DNA from: Bugula neritina
Lineage: Eukaryota; Animalia; Bryozoa
DNA: 64,000 nt
Direction: 5' to 3'
NCBI GenBank assembly: GCA_964035545.1
Contig: OZ037765.1
Location: forward strand, 2,666,001 to 2,730,000
A program made the position numbers and the translations under genes. Below, in pieces: positions 1,077 to 57,548 of this stretch. Within the stretch, counting starts at the first letter, position 1. Each line of letters starts with the position of its first letter. The notes under the pieces were generated by a model that was not told the DNA's origin, searched no databases, and worked only from the letters and a program-made list of their open reading frames with translations.

Positions 1077-1365
1077 CTCCATGGATTTGCTGAGGTCATA
1101 GTGAAAGACTAAGCTGTGAGTCAGAGCTAACCTCTGTGGTTTCATTGGATGACCAGGTCCTAACAGATAATAAAATTCAACTAAATTGTAATTTGGTACT
1201 AAACAGTGCAGTAATTTCTATTCTACAGCTTAGCTTAACTTTAGTCACAAAAACATTTTTAATGTATTTTCTACTAAAAATACATTAAAAAGTTAATTTG
1301 ATTGACTCACCATAATGGAAGTTGCCGACATCAGAGTCATAGAAATAAGCTACTTTTCTGGCCAT
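1077..1365 (-). CDS. HDAC3: Histone deacetylase 3, first two coding exons (1365-1311, 1159-1077); the gene continues past the window start
   Basis: Spliced translation [19 protein letters not shown]|[27 protein letters not shown] matches the HDAC3 N-terminus ([36 protein letters not shown]). GT-AG junctions keep frame. Not in the ORF track. Confidence 0.92.
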
Positions 1366-1899: not shown

Positions 1900-3130
1900 A
1901 TCTTTGGTCAATTTCAACTGGTCTGAGTGCTTACTGAGTTAGAATAATAATGTGGTGGTCACTGTTAATTTATGATTTGATACAAATTAATCTCATTACT
2001 AGTGGTGATGATAACTTCACACAACTAGGTAATTTCTTTCTAGCCACCACTTTTTTCAAGCTGAGAAAACTGAAAACCCTAACTCAAAAACTTAATTGCA
2101 TTTGCAGTTGATGAACAAGCTTAAACTACTGGTACTAATACTACCAGTGGATCTGACATGCCATAGGCATATGCAAAATAATTATAGGTATTGGAATTTG
2201 CCATGCCAGATTTAGTGGTACTAGCAGCTTAGTTTCAATAACATTATCACTAAGATTAACTGAAACTCAAACTAATCTACTAAATTTAGAACTAATAATA
2301 GTAATGGGTCATAGTCATACTCATAGCAATGCTACCAGTACCAGTAGACGTAGTTGAGAACTAGAAGTAGGACTATTGTAACTACAGAATGCTATCAAAA
2401 AAAGCCAATAACTTAAACTAATTACTTATAAAGTTAAATTAAAGTAATTAAATGTAACAGCAATGGCCAATACGGATACCAATACTAATAGTAATAGTAA
2501 TACTCATACTGATTGACTGCTGATGCACTAACTCTAAGTGATAAGTCTAACACAAACAGTAGCACTAACAGTTATAGTGTGAGTGATGCTGATGTCATAC
2601 TCGTAGTGATACTCATACTGATAGTGACTACGCTAATCTTACTCGTACACCTGTATTTATATAAGCTTATACTCAACTTATAGTTAGATTCAGTATTCTG
2701 TTGTCGTTGAACTTAAAGTTAATGATTTTGATTTAGTTTTACTTTTTAGTTTTTATCAAATAATTATTTTTTTTTACTAAAAATAAATTACTAAATTAGC
2801 ATTAAAACTAGATTTAGTATAAGTAAATTGTTTACAACTGAAATATAAAAGTAAAACTTGAACAATCATTTAATTTCATGTTGAAATTGTAAAACTAAAA
2901 GCTTTACAATTTCAATTTGAAACTGAAAGTAAAACTTAAACACTAACTCTTAGAGTTACTGTTAGCAACCACTTCAATGCAGTATTTATATCTTAATTTA
3001 TGGTTTGAGTGTTGTAGCATTTTATTCTTAAACTGTTACAAGTCAGCTTTAGTAGCATATTAATATATTTTATTGAAGAAGCTTCAACGCGAATGAGCAT
3101 TATAATTATATAGATTTAGCAAGAAACTTG
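1900..3130. repeat. 6-bp-phased cryptic low-complexity tract in HDAC3 intron 1
   Basis: Examples: atacta atagta atagta atactc atactg (about 2482-2511) and aatttc aatttg aaactg aaagta aaactt (about 2908-2937). No perfect tandem unit. Boundaries approximate. Confidence 0.7.
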
Positions 3131-3159
3131 GTTTTGAAGGGGTGAACTTCGATTTTTAC

Positions 3160-3204
3160 CTCCTCATCGAAGCACACGAGTTCTCCATTATTCGGGTCGG
3201 AAAA
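3160..3204 (-). other. Probable upstream 5'UTR exon of HDAC3, spliced to the acceptor at 1437
   Basis: GC-richer island ending in GAG|GTAAAA. The exon holding the HDAC3 ATG starts at an acceptor (gttacag|TGTTAG, 1436), so an upstream exon or trans-splice is needed. Confidence 0.5.
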
Positions 3205-3639
3205 CTGTATTAGAAAAACTATTGAGTAATAGACAGAAAAATATAGAGAAAACAACTTCTATTTAAAAGAAACCCTTCCAACATAAAACTGAAAATTCAT
3301 TATACAGTTACAGGCACTACATGCTTGCTATTGAGCATAGCCAAGTCTTATTTATTAGCTGTAGGTAAAAGTTATCATTGATTCAGTCATTATTTCGAAG
3401 CAACTTAAAAACTAATGCTTATACTAGGGGGTTGCTAATTATTAAAGAAATTTTAAATACAATCTCTCATGATAAATATATGTATTCGAATTCAAGAAAA
3501 AATTTTCAAGTGAAAAGTGTTAAAATATTATACAATAATGTATAACTCTTTAATAAATGTACAGCTCAATTTACAGAAAGCTAAGAAGTGCATAAAAAAC
3601 AAAATAATTCAAGTAGTAAATTCAGTGTAGAACTTGTGC

Positions 3640-6600: not shown

Positions 6601-9600
6601 GGAGGATCCACATCCTCTTTATCTCTTCCCTCTTCTACTTCATCAGAGTTCGGAACGGAGTTGTCTAACTTTTCTGAAGAAAACCAACAGTCAACAGACT
6701 ATAAACTTTATTATGCCTAGTGAGTAGCGGCCCACAAGAGGGGCTTAAGTTTTGAAAAATCAGTTTAACTAACTAGTTTAACTAAAACATTACTTCATGC
6801 ATACAACACTGTTTAGCATACGGTACTGTCTAGCACACAACACTGTATAGCACACAATACTGTTTAGCACACAACAATGTCTAGCAGACGGCACACAGAC
6901 CTGGTTCATCTGATGCGCTGCCAGACTTGGAGTCTTTCTCCTGGAAACATTCTAGCCCGTGAACCATTATGATGTCAAACAGAGATTCAATGGCTGACAC
7001 TTTGATGGCCTCGTCATCCAGTTGACAAATCTGTGAAAATACACAACTAAGAGAATTCCGTGTAAGCTAACAGTTGGTAAACAAGAGGACACAACTCTCA
7101 CAGCGTAAAATAGCGGGCAAAGATTGAAGATCTATACCCTAACCACATCTCAAACAAAAAAACAGACTAGATAGAAAAATGAAAAAGTAAATGAAATTAT
7201 GCTAAGTTCTACTTTTCTAACTGAAAAATTACTGATTGAAACATCAATTTAAAGCCAAATTTCAATCGATAATATACGATATACAAACAGAGAACTCTGT
7301 ATACCCTCCAACAAAGAAGATATAACTACTCAAAGCCACTCGGATTCATTGCACTAAAATAAGAGATGTGAGGTGATGCATAATATCCTAGCTGCTGGAC
7401 AATGAGAAGTAACTTCTCAGCTAATAAAAGTTAATATATTATAAACAAGAGAATAAAAAATTAATCAACATGACACAAATTGATATAAATGAGGAAATTT
7501 TTAAGTAACTTCAATAATTCCAATTTAATAAATTTTGGCAGAACCGAATTAATAAACAATCTTTGCTAATTTACAATACCTGTAAGAAAATTGGTAGGAA
7601 CTTCCTTGCCACCTCCTGGTCACAAAGTGCACAGAGACCGAGAGCTTTGATAGCCTGTTTTCTGATGGCTGGACAGCTGTGTGGTATGGAGGCTATGACA
7701 AGCTCCTCCATATATGATCTTATAGTGTCAGTCATAGTGGACATGTCCCCACTCGTCATCAACTCCACAAATATAGTGAGGCACTTCAGGGTAGTGGCTG
7801 CATCAGTTCGAGTCTGTGAGATATCCATAGAGAACAATATGTGAGTATCCGGCACTACTCTAGTCAGTTATTATACTCAGTGAGTACTACTGTAGTCACA
7901 GTTATACTCACAGAACACAATTGTAGTCACAATTATACTCACTGAGTACTACTCAAGTCACAGTTATACTCAGTGAGTACTACTATAGTCACAGTTATTA
8001 TACTAACTGAGTACTACTGTAGTCATAGTTATACTCAGTGAGTACGACTATGGACACAGTTATTATACTCAGTGTAGTCACAGTTATTATACTCAATGTA
8101 GTCTCAGTTATTATACTCAGTGTAGTCACAGTATACTCACCTCAGCAGGCACAGTCACTGGTTTAGGAGTCATCTCCTCTGTTAGCGCCTTCTTACTCTC
8201 CTCCAGTATCTCTATTTTCTCCTTGACCTGAGCCGCTGTGGCGAAGTCCTGCTGGGCCACCGCCTCCGCCATCAGCTCAGACAACTCGTTGAGATTCATT
8301 CTGACTTTGGCCAACTGAAGATAAGTAAAACGTGTTTATATGATATACTCAGACTATACATGTGTATATACTCAGACTATATACGTCTTTCATATGTATA
8401 TACTCAGACTATACATGTGTCTCATATGTATATACTCAGACTGTACATGTATTACAGACTACAACTCATAGCATGTTATAACAGAGACTAAATAGTTTTT
8501 TTCTAGAAAGAAAAAACAATAAGTTAAACCTATTCTGATTAGGTTTGCTAATAAAATTGCTGCAAACCATATATAAATATCTAAAATGATATATTTATGC
8601 TGAAAAATAACAATAGGACAGTAAAACGTCATTTAATCAAAGGATTGGTATGCTATAAAAATTGAATATATAAAATGATATATATACCATGTATGAAAAA
8701 AACAAAACTGAAAAAATGTTTTATTTTTCTGTTCTGCCTTGTTACACACAGCATACGGATGTGCTGTAGTGCATAATCAACTAGGTAATGAGATTACCTT
8801 CGAATATAAAAGACGACATTTTAATGAAAATTTAACTTGAGCAATCTACAAGACACCAAATTATACAGTCACTTAGGAATGACAACTCCCATTTGAGGGC
8901 AAATACAAACAGGAAATAAATTGGTCACCTTGTATTTGAGTTGATGAAGCGTGTCGGGGTCTACAGATACCTCCTCTGTTACATTGGGCATTTGAATATC
9001 GGAGATGATGGTAGCCACCTCAGCCACCCTCTCCTGAGGCACCCAGAGTACTTGCTCCAGGCAATGCATAAGATGTGGAGCCAGCGATAGACTGAGGTTG
9101 TCATTGCTAAGCAAATTCTTACACAGCGTCAACACGCTGTTCCTAAAATAGTAGCATAGCTTTCTATAGAACACAGGCTAAGTGAATTAACATTACAGTC
9201 AAATGAAACAGTTTCCAGAAAAATTTTATTTCTCAGAATATTTTAATGTTTATTGTTGCAAATCAGCATTCTGTAAGGAGTATAAAATAAAATATACATA
9301 CGAACTACACTACTATAAGTTTAGGATTGAACCTAAACTTTCCTTTCATTGGACACTATTGCAGCTTTATTACGCACAGTCAAAGCTTGCTAAACACCAG
9401 TAACCCACCTGCTAACTAGGAGTAACTCACCTACTAACTGACAGTAACTCACCTAACTAACAGTAACTCACCTACTAACTGACAGTAACTCACCTACTAA
9501 CTGACAGTAAGTCACCTGCTAACTGACAGTAACTCATCTGCTAACTGACAGTAACTCATCTGCTAACTGACAGTAACTCACCTACTAACTGACAGTAACT

Positions 9601-12600: not shown

Positions 12601-14745
12601 ATAATTAACGCTGCATAACATCATTTTAAACAGCATATCAGTAAAAACATATGAACAGATAATGTGGGTATCTTCACAGAATTACCAAATATTATATCAG
12701 GAATCAACTTGTTTGCACTCAAAACGTACTTGAGTAACTCTGGTCTTTCAAAACAAGAATCTAAATATACATTACGTAACTCAATTTTTGACGAAAAACT
12801 TCCTTAAATGCTAATGTTGAAATACCTTTGATGATAGGGCAGTGTTTGTCAGAGGGGTCTTGTAGTCGACAGAGGGCGGTTATAGCGTGCACCCTCACAC
12901 TGGGAATCTTGTCACTCAGTCTAGCGTGCATACACCTGATGATGTCATCACACAAGTCGTTGTCCAACTCCCCGTTCCCGATGTAGTCGACAGTAAGAGC
13001 AATAATCTGACACACTCTATACCGGATAGCTTTGTGATTAGCTTCATGCGACTGTTAGGTGAAAGAAAAAGACAATTCTAAAAACCCTCGTCTGCAATCC
13101 GACACACACAACTGTATGCAATATTAAAAACATGAAAACAAAACTTGATAAAGATGTGCTACAATTAAGAAAACTAAACTTGTTCTAACAATATCACACG
13201 TACTTTTACACCGCTTTTCCACATTGAAAGCTATTTTATTGTGCAACTTAATGTTCTGTATATTAGTGAATATATGATAACTATGATATATTATGCACCC
13301 GTAGTGAGGTCATGACCTTTACAGCACAAACTCACTTAGCAGCATGGAGTATCAGTATCTAGTTAACTGATCTGATCCGATAGAAAATATATTGAGTAGG
13401 TTTTTATTTTTCAAGAAGCCCTATTCAAAGAATATTGAATTTACTTTACAAAAAAAATGTGCCGTCATTTTCATCGGTCACAGTAGTCTTACCTTGAGCA
13501 AGAAATCCATGGTATCCTTGAACAGGCCAAACATTTGTTTGTCATTTCCAGCTTTAGCGATAGTCTTGGCAATAAATCGCACCAGCCTCTCAACTGTGGG
13601 CTCTGGCTTATTCTCCACCAAAACATACTTCATGAAATGAATGAAATCCTCATTTAAATCTCCCTTACCATCCTAAAATGAATTTCTAAAGGAAATGAAA
13701 TACTGAACAACAATGAATAGGGAGCAAAGCTGTATCTTACAATCATGTTGTGCAAACTGCATTTACACTTGACATTTATTATTCTAAATTTCTTTAACTT
13801 TTTTAATCTTTTGGTATGAGTCACCTTTACTCGTAAATTAAACTATTTAGATACTAGTAGAAAAAGGAAAATCTGCTTTATTTAGATGTAATCAACTCAA
13901 AGCAAATAATGTTGCCTATGTTGATACAATACTTATTAGCGCCTTGAATTTATAACTACATAATGGTGGGTTGAATTAGTTGTAAGTACAGTTGTAATTA
14001 AGCACAAGAAAATAAGTAGATAATGAGTTTGTTTCAACTTGAGCTTTATTTTTAGGTTCACGTTAATGTTATACTAATACTTATTGACTCATTAGTGATT
14101 ATCTCTTTCACTTTTATCAACTTTAAGGATATATTTCAGTTTGAACTACACTGAAAGTTAGTGTTACTCAGAGTGAATGTGAAACTGAGAGTCAGTTTGT
14201 GTTACACTTTGACTTACTGTTAATGCTACTCTTAGTGTTACACTTGAAATTAAGCTTAATCTTACAGTTACACTTACTGTTAATTCTTTAGACTTTAAAG
14301 TTTAAGTTTAACTTGATTCTTAATCCTTAACTTTCAATTATTGTAATTAGTCACTACTCACTAGACCTAGTTACTGTTGGTATTAACTATTATACTTTCA
14401 CCTTGACTTACTCAGCGTTGCTGTTAGACTTACTCTTAGTCTTAGACAGTAACTTAGAGTTACAGTTACTGTTAGTCACTTACTCTTAGTTATACTTATA
14501 GTAGTACTAGTAGTACAACTACATACTCATAAGTCAAAGTGGCATTACTGATTACTCATTAGTCATTAGCGACTGCGATAGTCATACTCATACAGTCATA
14601 CTCATACTGAGTGATACTCATACTCATAGTGATAGTGAGATAGTCAGATACTTACATTGTTGTGTAGGTCAAAAAGACTTCCCATAAGCTTTTCATGAAG
14701 ATGAGTGCTAAACTGAGCTTCAGCAAAAATTTCTTTTACTCCCAT
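3640..14745 (-). CDS. NCAPG: Condensin complex subunit 3 (CAP-G), 17 coding exons, about 1008 aa
   Basis: Exons 14745-14656, 13672-13493, 13051-12826, 12475-12245, 11765-11573, 11066-10917, 10050-9931, 9142-8929, 8314-8141, 7813-7580, 7030-6901, 6673-6532, 5990-5760, 5454-5112, 4582-4486, 4008-3819, 3721-3640 join in frame through GT-AG introns. CAP-G motifs SHEANHKAIRYRVCQ, ARLSDKIPSVRVHAITALCRLQDP, ERTRDVNEVIRKTAY, AEGLSKLLL and LSRLIILWYNP..LRHCLGVFFP. Confidence 0.95.
6800..6895. repeat. About 20-bp minisatellite next to an NCAPG donor
   Basis: Four to five degenerate copies of cacacaacactgtttagca. Confidence 0.7.
7852..8138. repeat. About 30-bp degenerate minisatellite filling most of NCAPG intron 9
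   Basis: Repeated tatactcagtgagtactactgtagtcacagt units run up to the donor at 8140. Confidence 0.85.
8340..8460. repeat. Short minisatellite upstream of an NCAPG acceptor
   Basis: About four tatactcagactatacatgtg units. Confidence 0.75.
9400..9940 (-). repeat. 22-bp minisatellite (about 24 copies) whose unit is the NCAPG exon 7 / intron 7 junction
   Basis: Minus-strand unit CAGTTAGTAG|GTGAGTTACTGT; the first copy overlaps the true exon end. Confidence 0.95.
10060..10690. repeat. About 26-bp AT-rich minisatellite abutting the NCAPG exon 7 acceptor
   Basis: Repeated tagaatatatatgttatatagrata units. Confidence 0.95.
11105..11335. repeat. 8-bp (cagagtga/cagagtaa) and 12-bp (aggtgaactatc) tandem repeats in NCAPG intron 5
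   Basis: Read directly; they explain the spurious ORF 11034-11303. Confidence 0.85.
13960..14652. repeat. 6-bp-phased cryptic tract in NCAPG intron 1
   Basis: tgttag acttac tcttag tcttag ... acttag agttac agttac tgttag and gatact catact catagt gatagt, running up to the first donor at 14655. Confidence 0.8.
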
Positions 14746-15169
14746 CGTGGTATTGAATGTGATGCATCAACTTCACATCGACATTACGAATCTCGTACTT
14801 ATTAACATTGAATTATTATTGTTTTCGAGTCCGTACACCAGAGTGTCATTGATTTGAATAACCTTCGGAATACCGCGGTTAAATCTCAAGATCTGAGCCT
14901 ATACATTGAAAAGTTAGTGGTTTGATGAGTAAACAGCAACGAACCGAAACTATCATGATGTTTGACTTTTTGGGCTATGATTTAGGCATTGAAGCAATTA
15001 GAAAGCTAGTTTCCGTCACTCCGGAGCTATTAAATATGTCCCCTTTCTTACAAACACTCTAATTTCAATTTGTGTCGACTTTTATTTTATTCTTTGCCAA
15101 TACATCACCGTATTTGGTTGATGTTAACGTTCAAGTTTTATATTTAAAGAAAAAGAAGAACATTCTAAG
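14746..15169. promoter_or_regulatory. Bidirectional promoter region between NCAPG and CACTIN
   Basis: Only 424 bp separate the divergent ATGs at 14745 (-) and 15170 (+). CpG content is locally higher. Confidence 0.75.
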
Positions 15170-18100
15170 ATGGGCAAACATAAGGATAGGCGTCACTCTC
15201 GTTCACTGTGAGGCTTAGAGTTAGGCGAAATATAATTTTAAACTAGAAGATTTCTCTTTCAGTTTCACTTTTAGTTTTACTTGTTCGGCTTGTTGTGCTT
15301 TTGCAATTGGAAATACTTATAACTATAAGTACTAATTATAAGTAATAGAAACAGTAATACAATTTTGATATTAAATTCAATCCAAATTGATGCTCATAAG
15401 TAATAAATATAATTATGTGATAATTTGATGGGATAAATAATTAATTAAATATAATCATTGTGATAATGATATTGATTATTATCTTGATCTTCATCTTGTT
15501 AAATGTTAATCAGTATAAGTATTACTTAAAGTTAAGCTACTTGTTAAGGCTTGTCAACAATAAAGTGTAGCACGAACAGTAACACTAACTGCAAGTGTTA
15601 CAGTCTGTACTGGTACATTACACTTTGACTTACTCATACTGTTGGTGTTAGACTTGGTCTTTCAAACTCAAAATTAGTGTCACTGTTCAGGTTTCGAAAA
15701 TTTTTTTGTAATAACTTAGTTATTAATTAAAAGTAGAGCTAGTACTAGTAGTAATACTATTAAATTTATTTAATAATTGATACTTATACAAGTTATACTT
15801 ATATATTTGTGATTATACAAGCAAATCTAAAGATATTCGTGCAAGACATAATCAATGTTAATGTAAATTCACTTTTTTAAGATTTAGCCACTTAAAAGCA
15901 TTAGTGATAATTATTTTCCACTTTTCCTATTACTATTAGTATTAGTGTTATATCTCACGATAAATATCCTAACATTGTCATTTTCATTTTGACTGCAAGA
16001 AGTACAAAACAAATTAAGGTTGATATAGACATTAAAACATAATCACTATTAAACAGTAATACAAACACTGGTATTTACATGCTTGAGTTCAACTTCATGA
16101 TCTTACACCCAGTCTCATAAACTAACTCTCAGCACTTACTCTCTAGGAATCTTTAGATTATTTGTTATATTTATGTCTATATCAGAAAAATTTATTTTGG
16201 AGTTACATTAACTTGATAAATTGTTTTCATTTTATTATATTTATCTTTTATGTTTCCACCAAGTCTTCTGTATTTTAATAATTTTAAATTATTAGTAAAT
16301 TTTTATTCCAGAATAGTAATAGTAGGCCTGAAATAATTAATATTTGTACATATTGTACGTATTTGTATTGATAACTCCATTTGTATTTTAAAGTATTATT
16401 GACTTGCAATAAAAATAATATGTTGAAACTTGACAGTGACTGTCGAGTTGTAATTGCCAGAGTTTATGTGACTGAAACTGAAGAAAATAGGAAAATCATC
16501 ACTATCAAACAAACACTCAATATTGTTACCAGGGAGCTTACCTCAAGTTATTAATATTGCTCAGTTAATTTGCTATGCTATAAATCATTCTACAGACTTG
16601 CATCATATGGCCACACACGCACAAACACGCCTAATTTTTTTTTAGATAATTTTTAATAAGTTTTCTATGTAATTTCTTGCACTACAAATCACCACTTTCG
16701 TCAAACTTACTTTTTTAATGTTACTCATTGTCAACACTGTTAAGGTTTCTCCACTGAGCATGATGTGTTTATCGTCTAGGAACAGTTGTTTTCAATTCTG
16801 TGCTATTTTTAGATCAAGGGAAAGATCTCGATCTCCTAACAAATCACGGGACGACTTCAACAAGCATCGGTATGTTTGTGAAGTTTCTATTTTAAAAATG
16901 TAAGATACCAGAAACAATATTTTACTTCTAAATACATTGTTTTTTTTTTGTAATCGTTGCTCAATATTACATCACATTATCTGATTTTACTGTTAGGTAT
17001 GTCAGATAAGCAAGTATTAAGATATCAGATTTATGAAATTCTTTCTTGGAGTTGTCTTCTCACTACACTAGAATTGATCACTTTGAATGTTATTACTCCA
17101 TAAAATCTAATTTTGCTATAGGATTTCATTCATTAAAAATAAAACTATTGAAATTGGAAGATGATTCATTACTCACTAAAGCGTGAAAATGTTTTTGTGT
17201 GTTGATTAAACAACCAAAAAAGAATATTTGACGTTGTAATAATAATTTTTAGAAATATCAAAACTTTATATAATAAAAATATGTTATACTCTTATTGCTG
17301 ACAATTATATTATAATATTATGTATTAGTTTATGATATAGTATGTTCCCTATTGTATAAAATACTGAAATTCTGTAATAAGATGTTTTTAAGCATGTAAA
17401 GGGAAGATAACTGCAGAAGATGTGCTTTTTATCTCCTGCTGGGTTCAAAAATGTAGAATTTTATTTAGCTTGAGCTTATAATATTTATTTTACATTGTTT
17501 TGTTTACTGAGTAGACAATTTCTTATATTAAACAAAATTTCAAGAAATACTGTAATTCAAAAATTATATCCTTGCTCCACATCTATATAATCTATATATG
17601 TGACCAGTCGCGACAAAACCGGGGATGTGGCGGCGTTTATAAAGTGTAGTAAATGAAGGTTTAATTTGGAAATACTTAAATTTGATATTAATTTCCAGTT
17701 TTTAGGTTTTGAACTTTTCTAATACAAAAAAATCCAAGGATTTCAAAAATCATACTTTTGTAAGCATTTGATGATTCCTTCAGCTCTAAAATTGCACTTA
17801 AAGTTGGTAACTAAGGCGTTCAATTTTTTAAATGATGAAAAAATTGGGAAGTTATCAAACAAAGAAAGAAGACAATTTTAGTCATTTTCATAGCGTGAGA
17901 TCTTGCAAATTTATTTTTTATCAAATGAATTTAGCTTGCACCTCTTTCTTCGCATTGTCAGAAGCATCGTATTTAAAATCTAAGGCTAGTTTTAGTTTTT
18001 CATCGTGTTCCATCCAAAGTTAGCTTTTAAGTTACTGAGCTGTTTTGCCCTTTGGTGATAAATGCTAAACTTAATCTTTATCTTTAGCGTTCAAGCTTGA

Positions 18101-21100
18101 AAATCACAACAATACAGGTAATTATACTCAAAACCATCATTTACGCTACTAACTTAGAATTGTTGCCAGGATTATTTGTAGTTATCAATTTATTAATATT
18201 CATACTGATACTATCACTATGACTAGGACTAGGAGTATGTCGATTCTATACTATTACTAGTAACTATTTAAATGACTCACAGTTTGAGGTACGGTTACTC
18301 ATAATGATAATCATAATGAATATCATTCATAATTTACTGATACTGGTATTTGGCAGTAAAACCAAATGTAGCTCATTAATATTAATACTAATAGTAATAG
18401 TATAAGATTAAGTAATGATTAATAATTAAATTCACTATTTGAGTCTGACTCTGAGTTTCGCCTTACTTATAGTTGCTTGACTTACTTGAAGATGCAATCA
18501 CGTTAGACCACTAGATTAGTGTAAGCACTTGATACTCATACTGATAATATTATATTTGTTGATTTATTCTATAGTTGATATTTAAATTTACATTCACATT
18601 GGAGTTACTCTTAGTAACTTTTAGTTTTAGCCTCTGTCTTAGATTTTGTCAATACAGTTACTGATTACTATTAGTATTATTATTAACATTAGGCCTACTA
18701 GTCAAACTACCATTTCCTTTTGTGATTTTTAAATTAGCTCAAAGTTTGATTTAAAATATAATGATAAAATCTTTATCACATTATGCACGCTCACAGTTGC
18801 TGTCAAAACTCAATTGATAATCCTATTTATATTGATAAAAGCATCACCTCTAACCAAATTGAAATGGTAAATGTGATTAAATGTAAATGAGTATAATGAT
18901 GAAATATTAATGCGAGTTCATGGTGATTCTATAGTTGACTGACTTAGTTCTTCAGTAAGTTACTTTTAGTCTTATTTAGTGAGTAGTAACACTAACTGAA
19001 TGCATAAATACTCTAAACTTTTTTATTTGATTATAAAGGATGAGCAAACATTTATTCATATTTTAAAGTAATTTATTGAATTCAAATTGATTTTTATAGT
19101 AAATGTCTTAAATATATTCAGTTGCACTTAGCTAGCTTTTTTACTCGATTAAATGCCTGAGTGGTTAATAGTTATCGAAAGACATTGCTTCAAAATTGCC
19201 AATTGCAGATATGCTAGATATTCAAGTGCATAATGTGTAATTTTACTGATAATACTATGTTAATATAGAATAATCCGATATTCTGTACATTTTAGAAAGT
19301 GGACTTATGAGAGCATTAGAGTGAAGACTTATACCTACACAACTCTATTACCTATCAATCTAACACTTCTAATGTAGAATTTTGGCTTGCAAAGTTATGG
19401 CTTCTGCTTATTTCATTCATAAAAAAGGTTTGCAGTCTTTTAATGATGTGCTTGAAAATTTTCAACAATTTTTTAATTTAAATTGTTCTGTTTAATTCAA
19501 TAAATTTAAATGTTGATAAAATGCAGGATGACAATTAACTGCTGCCACAATAATACCACAAGAGTGTTTAACCAACTAAATTTTTATAATATAAAGTTCT
19601 GCGTATAATTTCTAATCAAGCTACCGTTTTCTTTTGTTATTTAAAGAAGTCAACATTGTACTTGCAGCTCTGGAATAGACAATAGATGAGTAGATTGGCA
19701 GGATGGATGTCAAGTAGCAGCATCTATAATTGCTAGAAAATCAGCTGATGATAGTGATGAAGCTTTTGCCACATACATGATGTTATGTGTCCATACTCCG
19801 TAAACTCATATTATGGAGACCAAGGACGTAGAAAGATGAAAAGTGCCTTTTTTGCAAAAACCGTAGAAGCTACCTAATTTTCTTTTCTTGATTAGAGTTA
19901 ATTCAAGCATAATGGTTGTATTCAGGCTGGATTTTTTACTGCATTTAATTAGTTTTTTAAAATAATGTATTTGATTTTTTAAATGTGAATATTAATGCCT
20001 AATAAAACTCAAAAGTTCTAATAGCTGATTTTATGTTTATATTTTCAACACCTCAGCCAAATCAATTGCTAAATTTAGTTGCCGTTAGAGATTATAAAGA
20101 TATTTATGAATGAATCTCGAATGATCTCATAATAGTCAAATAATTTTCTCATAAGTGTTCTACTCATTAAGCAATAACTATGGAACAGCACAGCTCAATA
20201 GCTGCAGTTTGACATATTACACAATATATTAGAGGAGAGGAAGATATTCAACGTATAACAGGAAGCAGCTGCCATTTTGTTTTATATGACTTCCTGCTGA
20301 CTTGGATGCCTAATTTAAATATCTCAACACACAAACTTGCTGAAACATCCTCTTCTTTGCTGGAATTGTTAAACTTTTCAATCATTAAACAAAGTAAAAA
20401 GCAAATTGACAAATAAGTTAGACAAAAGGTTTGGCGACCATATTTGACCTAATTTTATGTTGAGGCAGCATGAAATTTAGTTTAACAGAAAGCCCAAACT
20501 TTCACAATTATTTTGATACCAAATTTGTCACTATTCCTATTATACAAAGACCCGTTGCTAAGGCTTGTAAATTGTAAACAAATAATTCTCAAATTATTCT
20601 AGAGTTGCCAACTTTAAATGCGATTTTCTCGAAACAGTAATTTAGAAATTCTAAAAACGTTAAAGTTTTTAAATACTAATATCTCGAGTTCTATTTATGC
20701 TAGAGACTTCAAATAAAGTGCAAAATGTTCGAAAAAGTCTGCTCTATCACTCCACAGTAATAACTAGGTTTTCAACATTTTATATACATCCCTTGTTTTG
20801 TGGTGCCAGGTCACATATAATAGTAATGATGGCCGTGAGAAGCACAGCATAAATGCTAATCACTCATGTTCCAAAGTCATTGGGCATAGTGGCAACTAAC
20901 AAGACTAAAGCCACCCTTTTTTATTTTGATAAAGAATTTAATACTGTCACGTTTATTTTTTTGCTGTGGAGTGATGGTTGTCAATCTTGGTGAGATTTGA
21001 ATTTGTTACAGCTGCCAGATCATGATGTTTTTCATAACCAAAAGCCACATATTGTGTTACAATACTTGAACTCATGGCCTTCTGATATTTTTACTGGTTT

Positions 21101-24100
21101 CTGGCTAAGCATGTTCAAGGCTGCAGAAATTGCTTGCTGTTAATTTGTTTCATTTCCTAACGTCCTAAGATGTTGATAAATGTTTACAAAATAACATATA
21201 CGGTTACCAACCAATTGGAAGTAAACTGTTTCCCTATATTATTACTTTGTAACATTGTAGTTCCTCTGAGAAGAAAAAGTCCAAACACATGACTAAACAC
21301 AGGTTAGCTGGCTTACACATTCTACTGTGTAGTTGTTACAACACTGTAGCTCATGTCTGTATTTTAGGGTTGTAACTTGGCTGGAAATATTATTTGATGA
21401 CTTCCCTGCTCATTTATATAACAGAGCGAAAAAAATAGCTGTAAAAGTCATTGGCTTATCTTGGATGTGTGTATAATAAACATGGAATGCATCTGAAATC
21501 TATTAAAAATCTATAACCTGCATGTCAAGTTGTCTTTCTAATTTATACAAACGTTGCAAGCATAGTTATGTAGTATTATGTCAATAAGCTTTATTCAGTG
21601 TAGAACCTGTTACTAGATTGAGTCATTGAGAGTGACTAACAGTACGTACATAAAGCACTAGCCTATTATCTGAAAGTTATTTTCTGTTACAGCTTGTATA
21701 TCAACAATGCTATAATACACCAGTGTGTAGAGATTTTGTATTGATAATTTGTTGAAATAATGAACTGCCTTGTAAAATAAATCGGATTTCAGTTGAAGTT
21801 TCATCTGCAGCTTAGTAGTACAGTAAAATATATACTGGTATCCAGAGTGGTCAAATCTAAGTGAACTGCATGTTTATTGGTGTGTTTGTAGATACTCAGA
21901 TTCTGACTCATCAAATGATGGTTCTAGAGAGAAGAGACACAAGTGAGTAGATTACCCTTCAATATGATTCAGTTAAACAAGTATGCCAGTATGGCTTCCC
22001 CATCAGCCAATGTGAGGGATAAATGATAAGCTTTATTGCTAAAATGGTTTTACCATTCAAGAATCATCTCAACTTGGTTTTAATATTTTGTTTAATAATC
22101 TGAAATGTCCTACACATAATTGAAGTATATGGTTGTTTTATGTTATAGCAGTGAAAATAGGGTGATTTATTGAATGATGAAATAAGTATTATGCAAACTT
22201 CAAGATGCAGTGGACGAGTGACAAACACCATAATACTATGTTTGAACATGAACAGCTTCCTATACCACTACAGCTATATAACAGATACACTTTAAGCAGA
22301 TATACTATACTATACAATACTAATTGAAGCTTCAAAGTTTGATAAGTTTTAAAAATTAAGCTTGCTGCTTATGAAATATAAATCTAAATATCGGAACAAA
22401 AATAAGTCCAAACTTAAAATGCAAGCTTTGCTCTTGAGATTGACAACAATGTTAAAAGTGAATTTAAAAGATTAAAATTGAGCACAACATCACCATAGAA
22501 ACTAATATTATATATAAATTACTCGGTGAATGAAAAAAGATTGTAGTTTAGCAGAAAATCCACATAGGTTGCATATAGTTTATATTAATAAACTCTTACA
22601 TAGTTTAAAAGTTTGGTGATTTCCGTTCTGGGAATGAAACAGGATGAGCTGCAACCCCCTTAAGGAAGTACGTGATTGAGAGCTCGGGCAAAGCCATTAG
22701 TCTACAGTTGATGTCACTTTTAGCTGAATTTCTCAGCACATATCCAAGAGTATTGCTGCCGTAGGGTCTAAAGTATATTTGATTTTGAGCCAAATGATTG
22801 AAAGATGAAGAATTGGCTATGGCGAGGGTTTCCACACATTGGTCTAGGTAGTTTCCTTGGAGTTTGTGCAATGCACTAAGTTCTGACTGGAGCTCGTCTT
22901 TAGTAAACGTTTCGTCAAGCTCATTTAAAAACTTCTGTTTGAAGTGTTTATATATTCGGATATCAGCACCATTTAATCTTGCAATAAAGTTATTGATTTT
23001 TCGAGGATGATTTGCTTTTCTTGTTGAGTGACCATTTTGAGCATTCTGCTTAAAATATACAATGTCTGCCAACTCCCAGTTAAATTTCTTGCGTAGTAAT
23101 ATGAGAGATTCATCAAAATATTCGGTTATAATTACAATATTCATAACTCTGTCAAGTTGTTGAATGAGATTGTCAACATTTGCTGTATCCATCTTTTCCA
23201 TAGATAGTCCAAGGTCAAATGCCTGTAGATTACTTACAGGGAGCCCGCTGCTGCACCTACCAGTTGCCTGGATGCTGTCTATATAGGGGCTGTACATAAT
23301 GTTCTCAATGCTTGTGTTGAAACAACGTATGCTGTGCATGTTGTAATATGCAAATGCTGATTTGAACAATGACACTGGGTCTCGCAGTATAGTAATAAAC
23401 TTAGCTTCTGGTTTCATAATGATTTTCATTTCAGCCTCATGGAACTTGGAATGGTGAACCAAGAAGTCATATTTAGTTATACCTTTCTGTTTAGTCACAA
23501 ACTCCTCAGCATCAAATGGTAACGGCCAAAAGAATGAAGCCTTGAAAGCTGGTAGTGCTATTGTGAGATTTCGAAGTATTGCATATCTAAGCAGTATGTT
23601 TTGTATTGTGCTACTGCCAGTCTTGTGAGTTTTTAGGAGTAGAACCGACCGGACAGACTCGTTTCCTTCCTTAGTATATTTGGATCTTGCCTTTGCAAGA
23701 TCTTTGAAGTTTAGTATTGCATTAACTTGTTTGAGAGAAAGATTTCTATCCTTATTTCTATACTTTTTAAAGATATCTCTCCTGCTGCCAAATTGCAAAC
23801 TGTTCAATACATGTGATGGTTTGAATGCAGCGACTGATGCTCCTGAAGTCTGTCGCAGTTCATTATACTTATACAGGAGGAATACTCCATCTGCTAGTAA
23901 CATACACAATAGTATCTTTATACACAGTTTAAGTTTATTTTTACTCATCTTTTTCTTTCCGCTCAGTTCAGTTGTATATACCTTGGTCACAAACTACCAC
24001 CCTAAAAACAAAAACACACGCTACTTTAACTTATAATTTTACTTGTGTGAAATTTAAGTCATGACATATCTCTACCTGCTAGTAATTTATTGTATGAAAA

Positions 24101-27100
24101 TTGGGGTATCAACACCAACCGATACTTCTACAAATTTACCATCATTTTGAGCAAGCTATATCACAATGATATACCTACTAAGTAATCCCATACTTGGATC
24201 CATCAGATTGCACTTAGTACATTCAATAATTAAAGACAATTAACCTAATTAAAGATTTCCAATTCATGCTGAGCTCCTACATTATTTGATAAGTTTAGCA
24301 GTTCAAGTTTACACTGTTGTACTATGCTCTGCCAGCATGTTTATCATGTAGTGGCTACTATATAGAAAACATTAGCCTAGACTCTGTCACTAGTGTATAC
24401 GGTTATAATGATGTGATATGACCTGTGGTATTCCTACTCTAATAACAAGCCAAGCCTAATTATTTAAGGTATGTGTAACTGAATTTTGGTTAGAGCTGAT
24501 GGCATTAACCTCTTACAAATCATTTCCAATTTAAATGACCTAAACCATATAATTATGCTTTTTAAAGTTAATAACCAGTAATGACAAGTTGACAAACTAG
24601 AAGCTTTAGCTTGCCAGAAGCTCAATAACTGCTGATGAACTCGGTATGAAAACTTAGCTCCAAACTCAGCCATAACATTGTGAAATTCAAAATGTACACT
24701 CAACTTACTACTTGGTCCTATAGTTATAGCGATAGTAATCAACGTATTTTATTATACAAACTATACTGATATAGTTAGTAATACAATAGTAATTTACAAA
24801 TTATACTTATATTTTATACTATCACTATTGGTACTACATTTAATTCTACTATGACTAGTTGTGTTTTTATATTACTATTAGACTATCACCATTAAACTGT
24901 TGTGTAATATTAATATCATTATTAATACTATAGTCAACAATTTTAAAAGTATCACTTTTAGTATTACTGCTTTATCAAGTGTTAATATTCATACTCATAC
25001 TGTAAGTATTAGTAGTAATCTTATAGTATTACTATCAGTTATACTTGTGTCATACTACTTAGAGTTAGTCTAATCCCTAGTGATAATAATAATAACTTTA
25101 ATGAGCATGATAATTATAATATTATTTAATAATTATTATTAAACTTGATACTTGGTTTAAAAATGATACATCATCAGTGGTAATCATTATGATAATCATA
25201 ATAGTTTGATGTAAAAGAATAGCAAAACCAACATAACAAACTGAGAATAAGTCTAACACTAAGTCTAACTTCTAGTACTACATTTAGTTCTAGTTTCTAC
25301 TAATCATACAACAGTAATCAGTAATCATGTAATAACTAAGAGTACGTCTAATGAGTAATTTCACTGAAACTGATTCTGAAAGTAAAACTGAATTTAGTTC
25401 AACTTACTAAATTTAATATTAATAATATTGATTATATTCAATACCTTTCAATTTCTTTGACTAATTGCTTAGTAATAGACTAATACTAGTAATAGTAATA
25501 TTAATAGTAATAGTGATAATAATACTAACAGTGATTCACTATTAGTATTACTAATAGTGATTCACTATTAGTATTACTAATAGTAATAGTAATACTATTA
25601 GATTTAGTATTAATACTAATACTAATAGTAATAGTAATAGCATTACTAATACTATTAGTATTACTACTACTATTAGTATTATTAATACTAATAGTTAGAC
25701 TAATAGTAATAGTAAAAACTTACATTTATAGTAGATGTAATCAGTGACAGTAACACTAACAGTAACCGTAATTCAAATTGTAAACCACTCAATCGTAGAC
25801 GATAAACGTAAATTTAATCATAAATGATCATAATGACTATCACTATGAGTGTGAGTATCAGTATGTAGATATCTATAATGATTTTTAAAAAATGAGCAAA
25901 ATAGAATAAAAAATACATGTCATTGTCTGGATAAAGGAAAAATGTATGGTCATAACTCATCAGTAAAACAGTAAATGATTACAGTTACTGACAGTAACTG
26001 AGTTAGTGTTACTTGAAGTTGATGAGTAAAAGTAATGCTACGTCCAAGACCAACGGCAATTTGAATTTCAATTGTTGAACCAAACGTTAGCATTTCAAGA
26101 TAACATCATGTAGATTAAAAGTATTCATGTGTCATCAAGTGAATTTCGAAAATGTATACCTGACGTTCTGCTAACAGACAATACGCGTTGAGATGATGCA
26201 TATTGTTATCGTGTTTATTAACTAAACCGTAAACAGGCTCACGTAGTTTTAGTGTAGCCTGTGTGAGCTGCAGCGTTCATTAAAATAATAAACCTACACG
26301 ATACGGTCCAATCACAGCGCCTAATAGGCTCGGTGTGGGAGGCGTGGCCTATACTACTATCACGTCATGGTCGTTAAAATGAATTGAATGCTCCATTTCA
26401 GGGGTTATAGTGAATATTTTTATAGCAACCGTTGCACTTTTCCTTTATGTTTGATCTAACAAACGAAATTCGGATCTATCAATTTTTGTTTCTTACGCAG
26501 ATAAACCTATTAGAAGTAGCAGCAATTAATACTATTATTTAATATTTAATCATGAACTCGCAACTACTTTCAACAAACTCCACATTAATAATTCCCTCTT
26601 TCTCAGCATTGCCTCTACTCAGTTTTCTGCTGCATGGCAGGCAACATTACCGCTGACACTAAGATGTCAAAACACCTTCCTTTAATTTTACAACAAATTC
26701 TATTGACCTACACCTGTAGGAGCTTCTGTGGTGGCTTAGTTTTAACAACCACAAACATATGGCAGCGGCCAAGAACAGAAAAGATTGATCTTGCACAAAC
26801 CCCAATCTCTAGTGAATATTTTAATAATTGCTGCTCGATTTTATTTCTTGTTTGAATTATATTATTTATTATAAGCAGAAATCAGGACTTGAGTTGCAAA
26901 TACAAGTCCCTTGTTATGCAGTCTTATTGATTATACTAGTCTTAGGACCTGTTTGCTTTTGCTGTAGTATTTATGCATTTTCTACTTTCTTATGCTAATC
27001 AATGTCCATCTCAGCTTACTCAAAATTCATCCCACATTGTCCCAATAAAATATCATGCTAAACACAATGGCCATGCAATTATATATATATAGTTTTGTGT

Positions 27101-37647: not shown

Positions 37648-40986
<3,339 letters not shown>

Positions 40987-44806: not shown

Positions 44807-57548
<12,742 letters not shown>

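What the first reader, a model, noticed from the sequence alone, without database searches (positions are those of the whole stretch)
1900..26100. Candidate new promoter-proximal DNA signal: 6-bp-phased tracts after the first splice donor of four unrelated genes
Seen: four tracts of 0.7-1.6 kb (about 1900-3130 HDAC3, 13960-14652 NCAPG, 15250-16150 CACTIN, 24480-26100 sulfotransferase) each begin within about 60 bp of the gene's first donor and fade with distance. They do not align to each other and are not tandem repeats. They share a hexamer phase, roughly W-S-W-S-W-W, using TTAGAC, TTACTC, TTAGTC, ATACTC, ATAGTG, ACAGTA and ACACTA. The pattern is its own reverse complement, so it is strand-independent. 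I did not see it in later introns (apart from a transposon-borne copy) or in the collagen genes. Established: other animals have TSS-linked compositional landmarks, such as vertebrate CpG islands and the 10-bp PATCs of C. elegans germline-gene introns. I know of no 6-bp equivalent. Inference: this could be a lineage-specific mark of active or germline promoters (a protein-binding lattice, nucleosome or methylation control, or anti-silencing licence), or a TSS-linked mutational footprint. The first-exon calls for HDAC3 and the sulfotransferase are themselves inferred.
Basis: partly seen in the sequence, partly recalled or inferred. Interest (0 to 1): 0.9.

Follow-up and report, generated by a model that had tools for sequence, protein, structure and literature searches.

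The report
Six-base lattice DNA behind bryozoan promoters
In this bryozoan genome the first kilobase of intron behind four gene starts is filled with fast-changing six-base units (A, C-or-G, T, A, A-or-T, T). The C or G behaves like a coin flip. The feature is real and tied to gene starts, it is missing at the same genes in another bryozoan, I found no paper describing it, and its function is untested.

Summary
Four tracts (2088-2996, 13998-14654, 15208-16120, 24774-26101) match themselves at a 6-base shift in 0.45-0.49 of positions, against 0.28 in the background. They share one self-complementary profile, A-S-T-A-W-T.

- **Tie to gene starts.** An RNA contig places two tracts directly after the first donors of NCAPG and CACTIN. 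The other two end at CpG-rich patches upstream of the HDAC3 and sulfotransferase start codons. In 20 other loci of this genome, tracts lie upstream of the first coding exon in 17 and downstream in 3, and they abut CpG-rich patches.
- **Not a transposon or satellite family.** The tracts do not align to one another beyond low-complexity matches.
- **Odd evolution.** Neighbouring units resemble each other, but their C/G is uncorrelated. C<->G swaps make up 43% of neighbour differences, against 7% in ordinary minisatellites of the same window.
- **Fast change.** A tract inside a 3.2-kb transposon has diverged about 4.7 times faster than its flanks in the same copies.
- **Lineage-specific.** The syntenic promoters of Watersipora subatra have no tract. 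A third species has short patches.
The "collagen genes" are a GC-rich LTR retroelement.

Best reading (0.45): a promoter-anchored mutational footprint made by unit duplication plus C:G flipping. A selected chromatin signal is not excluded. This scan found the same class in other windows of this genome.

The parts
1309..1365 (-). HDAC3 first coding exon (start codon at 1365). The rest of the gene lies left of the window.
   Evidence: The six-frame read shows the conserved HDAC N-terminus. Hist_deacetyl exon hits lie at C1:2662144-2664865 on the minus strand.
2088..2996 (.). Lattice tract T1, upstream of the HDAC3 start codon, in an inferred 5'UTR intron.
   Evidence: Lag-6 match 0.484 against 0.279; 34 AST-6-AST pairs per kb against 1.7 in background.
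3001..3200 (-). CpG-rich patch, the putative HDAC3 promoter and non-coding first exon. A candidate donor lies near 3160.
   Evidence: CpG observed/expected 1.17 in a genome that runs at about 0.3-0.5; sequence read. Not verified by RNA.
13672..14654 (-). NCAPG intron 1. Lattice tract T2 fills 13998-14654, starting at the donor GTAAGT (14654-14649) and fading towards the acceptor.
   Evidence: RNA contig X1 record 2 joins 13671|14655; sequence; lag-6 match 0.493.
14655..15207 (.). Non-periodic, CpG-rich bidirectional promoter core. It holds NCAPG exon 1 (start codon 14745, minus strand) and CACTIN exon 1 (start codon 15171, plus strand).
   Evidence: One RNA contig covers 14655-15207. CpG observed/expected 1.0-1.1 and lag-6 excess about 0. 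Start codons read.
15208..16120 (+). Lattice tract T3 at the start of CACTIN intron 1 (donor GTGAGG at 15208).
   Evidence: lag-6 match 0.451.
17596..20818 (+). Non-autonomous DNA transposon with terminal inverted repeats, at least 40 copies scored. It carries lattice tract T5 (18122-18760) internally.
   Evidence: Copies at 87-100% identity span the tract; inverted repeats. The tract part is 76-91% identical where the flanks are 95-98%.
22608..23948 (-). Galactose-3-O-sulfotransferase ORF in a single coding exon, nested in a CACTIN intron.
   Evidence: PF06990 homologues; the best named one is from Watersipora subatra at 47% identity. The same nesting is seen in Watersipora. CACTIN exons run out to 33856.
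24774..26101 (.). Lattice tract T4, the strongest one, upstream of the sulfotransferase start codon in an inferred 5'UTR intron.
   Evidence: Lag-6 match 0.487. TRF sees a period of 6 or 18 only at 25470-25715. Local inverted repeats, z -3.2 and -5.7.
26001..26600 (-). CpG-rich patch with CCAAT-like and CRE-like words, the putative sulfotransferase promoter and first exon. A candidate donor lies near 26162.
   Evidence: CpG observed/expected 1.16-1.25; sequence. Not verified by RNA.

Best explanation
The tracts are a lineage-specific class of hypervariable, cryptically simple DNA: a lattice of A-S-T-A-W-T hexamers. The lattice builds up in the first 0.7-1.3 kb of transcribed non-coding DNA directly behind CpG-rich promoters.

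I read it mainly as a mutational footprint of the promoter-proximal state in cells that contribute to the germ line. In that sense it resembles a CpG island, which is a footprint of staying unmethylated.

**Proposed steps**
1. Local, slippage-like duplication of one or a few 6-base units lays down and extends the lattice from the promoter side. The first exon and the core promoter stay constrained, so the tract starts at the first donor.
2. A second process swaps the C:G pair (C<->G) far faster than any other base changes. The strong/weak pattern and the A..T frame are kept while the C/G identity is randomised.
3. High turnover erases any alignable homology between loci and between species.

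**What is shown:** anchoring at gene starts, the shared lattice, the local similarity of units, the excess of C<->G differences, and the fast divergence.

**What is inferred:** that the cause is mutational rather than selective, that it acts in germ-line or stem cells, and what its enzymology is. A secondary role, such as easily unwound or nucleosome-shaping DNA behind the promoter, is possible but not needed to explain the data.
For: **Anchoring at gene starts**
- An RNA contig places T2 and T3 right after the first donors.
- All four tracts end at CpG-rich patches.
- For the two promoters with no gene on the other side, HDAC3 and the sulfotransferase, only the transcribed side carries a tract.
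- In 20 Ras/Arf-family loci, tracts lie within 6 kb upstream of the first coding exon in 17 and within 4 kb downstream in 3.
- Tracts abut CpG patches: median distance 99 bp against 875 bp for random placement, p = 4e-4.
- The tract nearest upstream of the start codon shows the T>A skew typical of transcribed sense strands in 18 of 20 cases, p = 0.0007.

**Local duplication**
- Unit identity is 0.53 between neighbours and falls to 0.43 by five units.
- Units from different tracts are 0.39 identical, which equals the profile expectation of 0.40.

**A change specific to C<->G**
- The A/T choice at position 4 is inherited between neighbours (9% differ). The C/G choice at the S position is not (60% differ in the same pairs).
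- Overall the C/G series cannot be told from coin flips.
- C<->G makes up 159 of 367 single differences between neighbours (43%). In the ordinary minisatellites of this window's later introns it makes up 8 of 114 (7%), p = 3e-12.
- A<->T changes are commoner than C<->G in those control arrays. Slow neutral drift would therefore have randomised position 4 before the S position, so drift cannot explain the contrast.

**Intrinsic instability**
- In 20 copies of the transposon, the tract part is 17.8% diverged and changes length, while its flanks are 3.4% and 4.1% diverged.

**Not needed for promoter function in general**
- The syntenic CACTIN/NCAPG promoter and the nested sulfotransferase of Watersipora have no tract.
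Against: - All tracts share one profile. Slippage alone would amplify whatever seed happens to be present, so either the process is strongly sequence-selective or selection is shaping the result.
- Differences that keep the strong/weak pattern are also what purifying selection on an A-S-T lattice would leave behind.
- There is no strand asymmetry in ACT against AGT or in G against C relative to transcription. A purely transcription-coupled lesion process might be expected to leave one.
- No known enzymology gives C<->G without A<->T or transitions. The swaps also occur outside AID-type WRC contexts (position 3).
- The transposon divergence appears to lie between subfamilies, because groups of copies share the same length and score. 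It may therefore have arisen in active source copies rather than in inert insertions.
- The genome-wide test rests on 20 loci from one gene superfamily. True transcription starts there are unknown.
Confidence: 0.45

Rival explanations
1. A selected signal at the level of double-stranded DNA. In this reading the lattice is a 6-base counterpart of the PATCs of C. elegans. It would be an extended element behind the promoter that acts in either orientation. It could shape chromatin or DNA mechanics (a TpA step every 3 bases, few A-tracts, easy unwinding), or it could bind an array of a lineage-specific protein that reads the pseudo-palindrome W-T-A-S-T-A-W without regard to the direction of the central pair. 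Selection would keep the strong/weak pattern and leave C against G neutral.
For: - One profile is shared by all tracts in the genome sample.
- Of the three binary encodings, strong/weak has the largest lag-6 correlation: 0.33, against 0.28 and 0.22.
- The composition is strand-symmetric whatever the direction of the gene.
- The tracts start sharply at the first donor.
- TpA steps are 1.6 times enriched, and A-tracts are depleted even though AT content is higher.
- A mobile element carries such a tract. This parallels the link between PATCs and transposon minisatellites (bioRxiv 10.64898/2026.08.08.743475).
- A third species keeps short lattice patches at the same promoter, with no sequence homology.
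Against: - The tract is absent at the orthologous Watersipora promoters.
- It diverges 4.7 times faster than neutral-looking flanks inside the transposon.
- Selection alone does not explain why the A/T at position 4 is inherited between neighbours while the C/G is not.
- Tract length and purity vary widely between genes.
- There are no functional data of any kind.
Confidence: 0.3
2. Scars of DNA transposons. In this reading, cut-and-paste elements repeatedly insert into and excise from open chromatin next to promoters. Each cycle leaves a short target-site duplication whose junction base is replaced by its complement, as happens when hairpin-forming transposases resolve the break. The scars accumulate into a short-period lattice.
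For: - Recurrent pairs of hexamers are identical except for C against G, and successive pairs differ from one another. Examples lie at 14488-14523 and 15262-15285.
- Among otherwise identical neighbours, 96 differ in C/G and 58 do not, p = 0.003.
- From general knowledge, not tested here: complement-type changes are the classic footprint of hAT-like excision, and many DNA transposons prefer the 5' ends of genes.
Against: - No transposon remnants flank the host tracts.
- Only one of the two junction-adjacent bases flips: T/A changes at position 2 number 11, against 98 C/G changes at position 1.
- A 6-base duplication is unusual for known superfamilies.
- The idea does not explain the A..T frame shared by all units.
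Confidence: 0.06
3. The tracts are decayed copies of one dispersed transposon or satellite family, or they are chance composition or an assembly artefact.
For: - T5 is indeed internal to a transposon with at least 40 copies.
- Short contigs from many other places lie on the tracts at 90% likeness or more.
Against: - Inter-tract hits are only low-complexity matches in several registers.
- The transposon matches the host tracts only over 27-52 bases of lattice.
- Shuffled controls give 0.9 kb of called tract against 30.5 kb in real DNA.
- DNA contigs of another run cover 12801-17622 with no differences, and an RNA-labelled run carries the same region at about 95% identity.
Confidence: 0.02

Closest known systems
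PATCs (periodic An/Tn clusters) of C. elegans (PMC4947018; bioRxiv 10.64898/2026.08.08.743475)
   Same: Both are extended, non-alignable, periodic, AT-rich non-coding DNA in the introns of many unrelated genes. Both are defined by phase rather than by sequence. Both have a link to a transposon-borne repeat and to transcription-linked mutation.
   Different: - The period here is 6 (3), not 10; there is no lag-10 excess.
- The lattice is built on A-S-T triplets and TpA steps, with A-tracts depleted.
- It is anchored to the first donor behind CpG-rich promoters rather than spread through introns.
- The host tracts show no transposon homology.
- No anti-silencing function has been tested.
Promoter-associated short tandem repeats (e.g. 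human, PMC3566118; birds, PMC4725869)
   Same: Both are simple-sequence DNA concentrated at gene starts, change quickly, and presumably arise by slippage.
   Different: - The known cases are short, fairly pure arrays of varied motifs.
- Here the tracts run 0.7-1.3 kb with only 53% identity between neighbouring units, and TRF misses most of it.
- One lattice is shared by all genes.
- The tracts sit downstream of the start, in the first intron.
Cryptic simplicity and minisatellites with interspersed variant repeats (general knowledge)
   Same: Both are scrambled arrays of related short units. Variant units are interspersed irregularly along the array. Both are hypervariable.
   Different: - The variants here are almost only C against G at one position, in coin-flip order.
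- The ordinary minisatellites of this same window differ mostly by transitions.
CpG islands as footprints of the germ-line promoter state (general knowledge)
   Same: Both are compositional landmarks tied to transcription starts that can arise without selection on the sequence itself. In this genome the two lie next to each other.
   Different: The tract is CpG-poor, AT-rich and periodic. It lies only on the transcribed flank (two of two promoters with no gene on the other side).
Somatic hypermutation window and immunoglobulin switch regions (general knowledge; a resemblance only)
   Same: Both involve a zone of altered mutation that starts just downstream of a promoter and fades over 1-2 kb. 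Switch regions are intronic, promoter-proximal arrays of short repeats. C<->G transversions arise there through uracil excision and REV1.
   Different: - No deaminase was looked for or shown.
- Swaps also occur outside WRC contexts.
- The motif is enriched, not depleted.
- The feature affects most genes rather than a few loci.

Membership tests
PATC (periodic An/Tn clusters) | About 10-bp periodicity of A/T tracts | tested here: not met
   The lag-10 match is at background level (0.27-0.32) while lag 6 is 0.44-0.48. A4/T4 runs are depleted, 17 against 27 per kb.
PATC (periodic An/Tn clusters) | Protects germ-line genes from silencing | not testable with these tools
   No expression or chromatin data were available.
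Microsatellite / minisatellite tandem repeat | Head-to-tail copies similar enough to be called as an array | tested here: not met
   TRF calls only 25470-25715 (period 6 or 18, 71-72% matches) and a 46-base piece of T2. Mean identity between neighbouring units is 0.53.
Microsatellite / minisatellite tandem repeat | Neighbouring units are more alike than distant ones (local duplication) | tested here: met
   Identity is 0.53 at one unit, 0.47 at two and 0.43 at five. Between tracts it is 0.39.
Microsatellite / minisatellite tandem repeat | Variant units differ by the genome's ordinary substitution spectrum | tested here: not met
   In the lattice, C<->G is 43% and transitions 22% of differences. 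In control minisatellites of the same window, C<->G is 7% and transitions 61%.
Dispersed transposon or satellite family | Copies align to each other or to a consensus beyond simple sequence | tested here: not met
   The host tracts T1-T4 and the tracts of 20 other loci share only low-complexity hits. The feature is met only for T5, which is part of a TIR element.
TSS-linked compositional landmark (the CpG-island kind) | Anchored at transcription starts of many unrelated genes | tested here: met
   RNA contig for two genes; CpG patches for the other two; 17 of 20 other loci, next to CpG patches. A whole-genome profile against mapped starts was not possible.
TSS-linked compositional landmark (the CpG-island kind) | Conserved presence at orthologous promoters in related species | tested here: inconclusive
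   Absent at the syntenic Watersipora promoters. Short patches flank the putative CACTIN promoter in an unnamed third species.

The most novel reading that the evidence does not exclude
A dedicated, promoter-anchored process of DNA change operates on the first kilobase of transcribed DNA in germ-line or stem cells of this bryozoan lineage. It duplicates 6-base units and flips single C:G pairs to G:C at a rate far above every other substitution. That would be a mutational mechanism with no described counterpart. Its product, the lattice, may in turn have been taken up as a chromatin or DNA-mechanics signal and by a transposon.
Probability: 0.25. Interest if true: 0.9.

Novelty: new variant of a known kind. 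Interest (0 to 1): 0.75.

Why it matters
If this holds genome-wide, the raw DNA of this animal marks most gene starts with a readable signature. That would help annotate bryozoan genomes.

It would also add a third kind of start-linked landmark to CpG islands and PATCs. Because the landmark is present in one bryozoan and absent in another at the same genes, its origin can be dated and its cause sought by comparison.

The C<->G coin flip on an otherwise inherited repeat is the more surprising part. It points either to a base-pair-flipping mutational process tied to promoters or to a constraint that reads only strong against weak base pairs. Either would be new, and either could be tested with population long-read data and simple reporter constructs.

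Tried and rejected
**Ideas tested and rejected**
- *Hairpin or cruciform potential as a general property.* Six of eight 150-base tract pieces fold no better than shuffles (z from -1.4 to +1.1). Only the purest part of T4 does (z -3.2 and -5.7), and the controls reach -3.1.
- *Hairpin-templated correction.* The C/G series shows no excess of palindromic patterns.
- *Strict alternation, or runs, of C/G.* Neither is present overall. Only the subset of otherwise identical neighbours leans towards flips, 96 against 58.
- *Micro-inversion of whole units.* C/G flips are not accompanied by the A/T flip at position 4 that inversion predicts: 91 flips alone against 6 with the partner flip.
- *An RNA-level signal (U1 or 5' splice-site decoys, branch-point or STAR-protein sites).* There is no sense-strand bias of ACT against AGT. 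Splice-site-like words number 40 on the sense strand and 33 on the antisense strand.
- *Avoidance of poly(A) signals, TATA boxes or long AT runs.* None is depleted.
- *AID-type hotspot targeting.* The TACT/AGTA context fits, but swaps also occur at position 3, outside such contexts.
- *Origin from the TIR transposon.* The host tracts share no flanking homology with it.

**Attempts that gave nothing**
I therefore had no random control regions and could not align the transposon copies.
- Looking up a transposon ORF in public assemblies found nothing.
- Contigs of further sulfotransferase and ARL5 homologues were too short or came without DNA.
- The N-terminal NCAPG and CACTIN exons gave no tblastn hits in the other species.
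- Five literature searches found no description of this feature.

**How protein searches were run.** All protein searches used single uninterrupted ORFs or exons, by reference.
Full report
**1. What the window is**

The window is G000:C1:2666001-2730000 of a 216-Mb animal assembly. Earlier follow-ups of this scan call the species Bugula neritina. I did not verify the species. What I did establish:
- The best named homologue of the window's sulfotransferase is from the bryozoan Watersipora subatra.
- The local gene order is the same there: the sulfotransferase is nested in CACTIN, and CACTIN is divergent from NCAPG.
- An RNA-labelled run filed as a symbiont metagenome carries the locus at about 95% identity.

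The small contigs of the assembly also hold intronless Ras genes full of in-frame TAA/TAG. These look like a ciliate contaminant. I used only the large contigs.

**2.

- In each of the four tracts, 0.44-0.49 of bases equal the base six positions on. At lags 5 and 7, and in 15-22 kb of other non-coding DNA, the figure is 0.25-0.29. Lags 12 and 18 are also raised.
- A sliding caller, with its threshold set on locally shuffled sequence, finds 30.5 kb of tract in 264 kb examined and 0.9 kb in shuffles.
- Refined limits are 2088-2996, 13998-14654, 15208-16120 and 24774-26101, plus 18122-18760.
- ACT and AGT are 2-3 times enriched and recur at a spacing of six 3-4.7 times more often than independence predicts.
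- A six-state phase-tracking HMM converges on A(0.70) C/G(0.31/0.29) T(0.74) A(0.47) A/T(0.47/0.32) T(0.55). That is 1.43 bits, against 0.07 bits when the same training is run on first-order Markov simulations.
- In effect the lattice is (A-N-T)n joined by TpA steps, with the middle base alternately strong and weak. It is its own reverse complement.
- Of the three binary codings, strong/weak carries the largest lag-6 correlation: 0.33, against 0.28 for purine/pyrimidine and 0.22 for keto/amino.
- TRF sees almost none of the tracts.

**3. Gene models and position**

*NCAPG and CACTIN.* I laid reads on 6,000 letters.
- One 880-base contig of the RNA-labelled run covers 13493-13671, skips to 14655 and runs on to 15207.
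- NCAPG is on the minus strand (start codon 14745). Its first intron is therefore 13672-14654, with donor GTAAGT at 14654-14649. The lattice starts at that donor and fades before the acceptor.
- CACTIN is on the plus strand (start codon 15171). Its exon 1 ends at 15207, the donor GTGAGG follows, and the lattice starts within about ten bases.
- The 553 bases between the two tracts are non-periodic and CpG-rich.

*HDAC3.*
- It is on the minus strand and its first coding exon is 1309-1365.
- The tract lies 0.7-1.6 kb upstream of that start codon and ends at a CpG-rich patch at 3001-3200.

*Sulfotransferase.*
- The ORF 22608-23948 (minus strand) is nested in a CACTIN intron.
- Its tract lies 0.8-2.1 kb upstream and ends at a CpG-rich patch, 26001-26600, which holds CCAAT-like and CRE-like words.

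*For HDAC3 and the sulfotransferase*, a non-coding first exon is plausible but not shown. The lattice begins about 100-185 bases after the best candidate donors. At both promoters the far side, which is not transcribed by that gene, has no tract.

**4. A sample beyond the window**

- I located first coding exons of 20 Ras/Arf-family genes on the large contigs through the N-terminal end of the Pfam Ras model. I then fetched 6 kb upstream and 4 kb downstream of each.
- Tracts lie upstream in 17 of 20 loci and downstream in 3.
- With the stricter AST-pair statistic the counts are 13 loci against 4.
- The tracts abut CpG-rich patches: median distance 99 bp, against 875 bp for random placement, p = 4e-4.
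- The tract nearest the start codon has T>A on the gene's sense strand in 18 of 20 cases, p = 0.0007. That is the usual mark of a transcribed strand.
- ACT against AGT, and G against C, show no consistent bias relative to the direction of the gene.
- The association with gene 5' ends is therefore not peculiar to this window. It rests, however, on one gene superfamily and on proxies for the true starts.

**5. Not a transposon or satellite family**

- Tracts of different loci give many BLAST hits, but all are multi-register matches of lattice to lattice at 70-82% identity.
- Shuffling the units removes them, because it destroys local runs of one dialect.
- T5 is different. It lies inside a 3.2-kb element with terminal inverted repeats, 17596-20818, which has at least 40 scored copies. 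One copy is 100% identical.
- That element shares only 27-52 bases of lattice with the host tracts.

**6. How the units relate to each other**

- Cut in phase, 2,845 units from 21 large tracts are 0.53 identical to their neighbour, 0.47 at two units and 0.43 at five. Across tracts they are 0.39 identical, which is what the profile alone predicts (0.40). Unphased DNA of this composition would give 0.30.
- There are thus two layers: a lattice common to all tracts, and local dialects that imply duplication of one or a few units.

*The C/G position behaves differently.*
- Among neighbours that agree at positions 0, 2, 3 and 5, the A/T at position 4 differs in 9% of pairs. The C/G at position 1 differs in 60%.
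- Over all chains the C/G series cannot be told from coin flips. Flips are 0.488 against 0.490 expected, with no excess of runs, alternation or palindromes.
- Among neighbours identical at the five other positions, flips outnumber identities 96 to 58, p = 0.003.
- Pairs of hexamers that differ only in C/G follow one another with different remainders, for example at 14488-14523 and 15262-15285.
- C<->G is 43% of all single differences between neighbours, and transitions are 22%. In the ordinary minisatellites of NCAPG's and CACTIN's later introns, C<->G is 7% and transitions 61%, p = 3e-12.

*Why this matters.* In those control arrays A<->T changes are commoner than C<->G. Slow neutral drift would therefore have randomised position 4 before position 1. 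The contrast needs either a fast change specific to C:G pairs or a flip coupled to duplication. This partly agrees with an earlier follow-up of this scan (s1-456792). I find a coin flip overall, and an excess of flips only among otherwise identical neighbours.

**7. Rate of change**

- I searched the three parts of the transposon separately and compared the same 20 copies.
  - Left flank: 96-97% identical.
  - Right flank: 95-98% identical.
  - Tract part: 76-91% identical, with lengths of 570-659 against 639.
- Mean divergence is 17.8% in the tract part, against 3.4% and 4.1% in the flanks. That is about 4.7-fold.
- Groups of copies share the same tract length and score. Much of this divergence therefore lies between subfamilies and may have arisen in source copies.
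- Either way the lattice part changes several times faster than the DNA around it.

**8. Other species**

- *Watersipora subatra* (annotated chromosome, locus L022). The CACTIN/NCAPG divergent promoter at 16865-17300 and the nested sulfotransferase are syntenic. The flanking kilobases show a lag-6 match of 0.28-0.29 and 0-3 AST pairs per kb, which is background.
- *An unnamed species* (ENA contig, locus L023) has the same nesting.
  - Two short patches flank a 600-base CpG-rich core that is probably the CACTIN promoter.
  - One patch is 591 bases (lag-6 match 0.40) and the other 141 bases (0.585).
  - They carry 20-71 AST pairs per kb, against 2 elsewhere on the contig.
- The lattice is thus lineage-specific in strength. 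Presence is kept at one promoter without any sequence homology.

**9. Ideas that failed**

- Single-strand folding is not generally better than in shuffles.
- Poly(A) signals, TATA words and long AT runs are not depleted.
- Splice-site-like words show no sense bias.
- Flips are not inversions.
- An AID-like context does not account for flips at position 3.

**10. Reading**

- I favour a promoter-anchored mutational footprint (0.45): unit-wise duplication plus C:G flipping in the transcribed kilobase behind CpG-rich promoters, with high turnover.
- A selected, orientation-blind chromatin or DNA-mechanics signal of the PATC kind remains a serious rival (0.30). Its main supports are the single shared profile and the dominance of the strong/weak coding.
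- The two are not exclusive.
- Papers searched gave PATCs and promoter microsatellites as the nearest known things. None described a 6-base lattice, bryozoan promoters or C<->G interspersion.

**11.

- The GC-rich 50-57 kb block is a Ty3/gypsy-type LTR retroelement, not collagen genes. I only describe it.
- The (TA)n arrays at 37954-38112 and 44993-45249, and the 38-base minisatellite at 28608-29200, also give lag-6 signal but belong to other classes.

**12. Handling**

Noticed in passing
window 49961-57235 (minus strand): A block of about 60% GC in a 36% GC genome. It is a Ty3/gypsy-type LTR retroelement with aspartyl protease, reverse transcriptase, RNase H and integrase ORFs, and CpG-rich ends near 49400-49900 and 57000-57200. 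I described it only.
   Followed up: partly
window 60826-63222 (minus strand): A second retroelement: a 573-aa ORF with a reverse-transcriptase domain (RVT_1).
   Followed up: no
window 28608-29200: A 38-base minisatellite (16 copies, 92% matches) that starts at a CACTIN exon's donor. Each unit repeats the exon-intron junction (..ACAG|GTGTGT..), so the intron begins with a row of decoy donors. A first-stage note (s1-478914) reports the same design in an HDAC3 intron just left of the window.
   Followed up: no
window 6799-12036 (NCAPG later introns): An unusual density of ordinary minisatellites, with periods of 8, 12, 17, 22, 24, 26, 31 and 32, up to 25 copies and 88-92% matches. Many units are rich in ACT/AGT words. 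They served as my control for the substitution spectrum.
   Followed up: partly
window 17596-20818; also G000:C3:29497086-29500308: A 3.2-kb non-autonomous TIR transposon. A second copy on another chromosome is 100% identical over the full length, which suggests very recent transposition.
   Followed up: partly
window 37954-38112 and 44993-45249: Two long (TA)n arrays, each followed by the same sequence of about 60 bases (AATAGTCAATTTCT..AAAGCTACAATTG..). This looks like another repeat family that carries a dinucleotide array.
   Followed up: no
G000 small contigs (e.g. C101, C110, C66, C213, C95): Intronless Ras and E2 genes with many in-frame TAA/TAG but few TGA. This fits a ciliate-type genetic code and so a contaminating ciliate in the assembly.
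   Followed up: no
L023 11850-11935: A tRNA-like sequence lies directly beside the lattice patch of the third species' putative CACTIN promoter.
   Followed up: no
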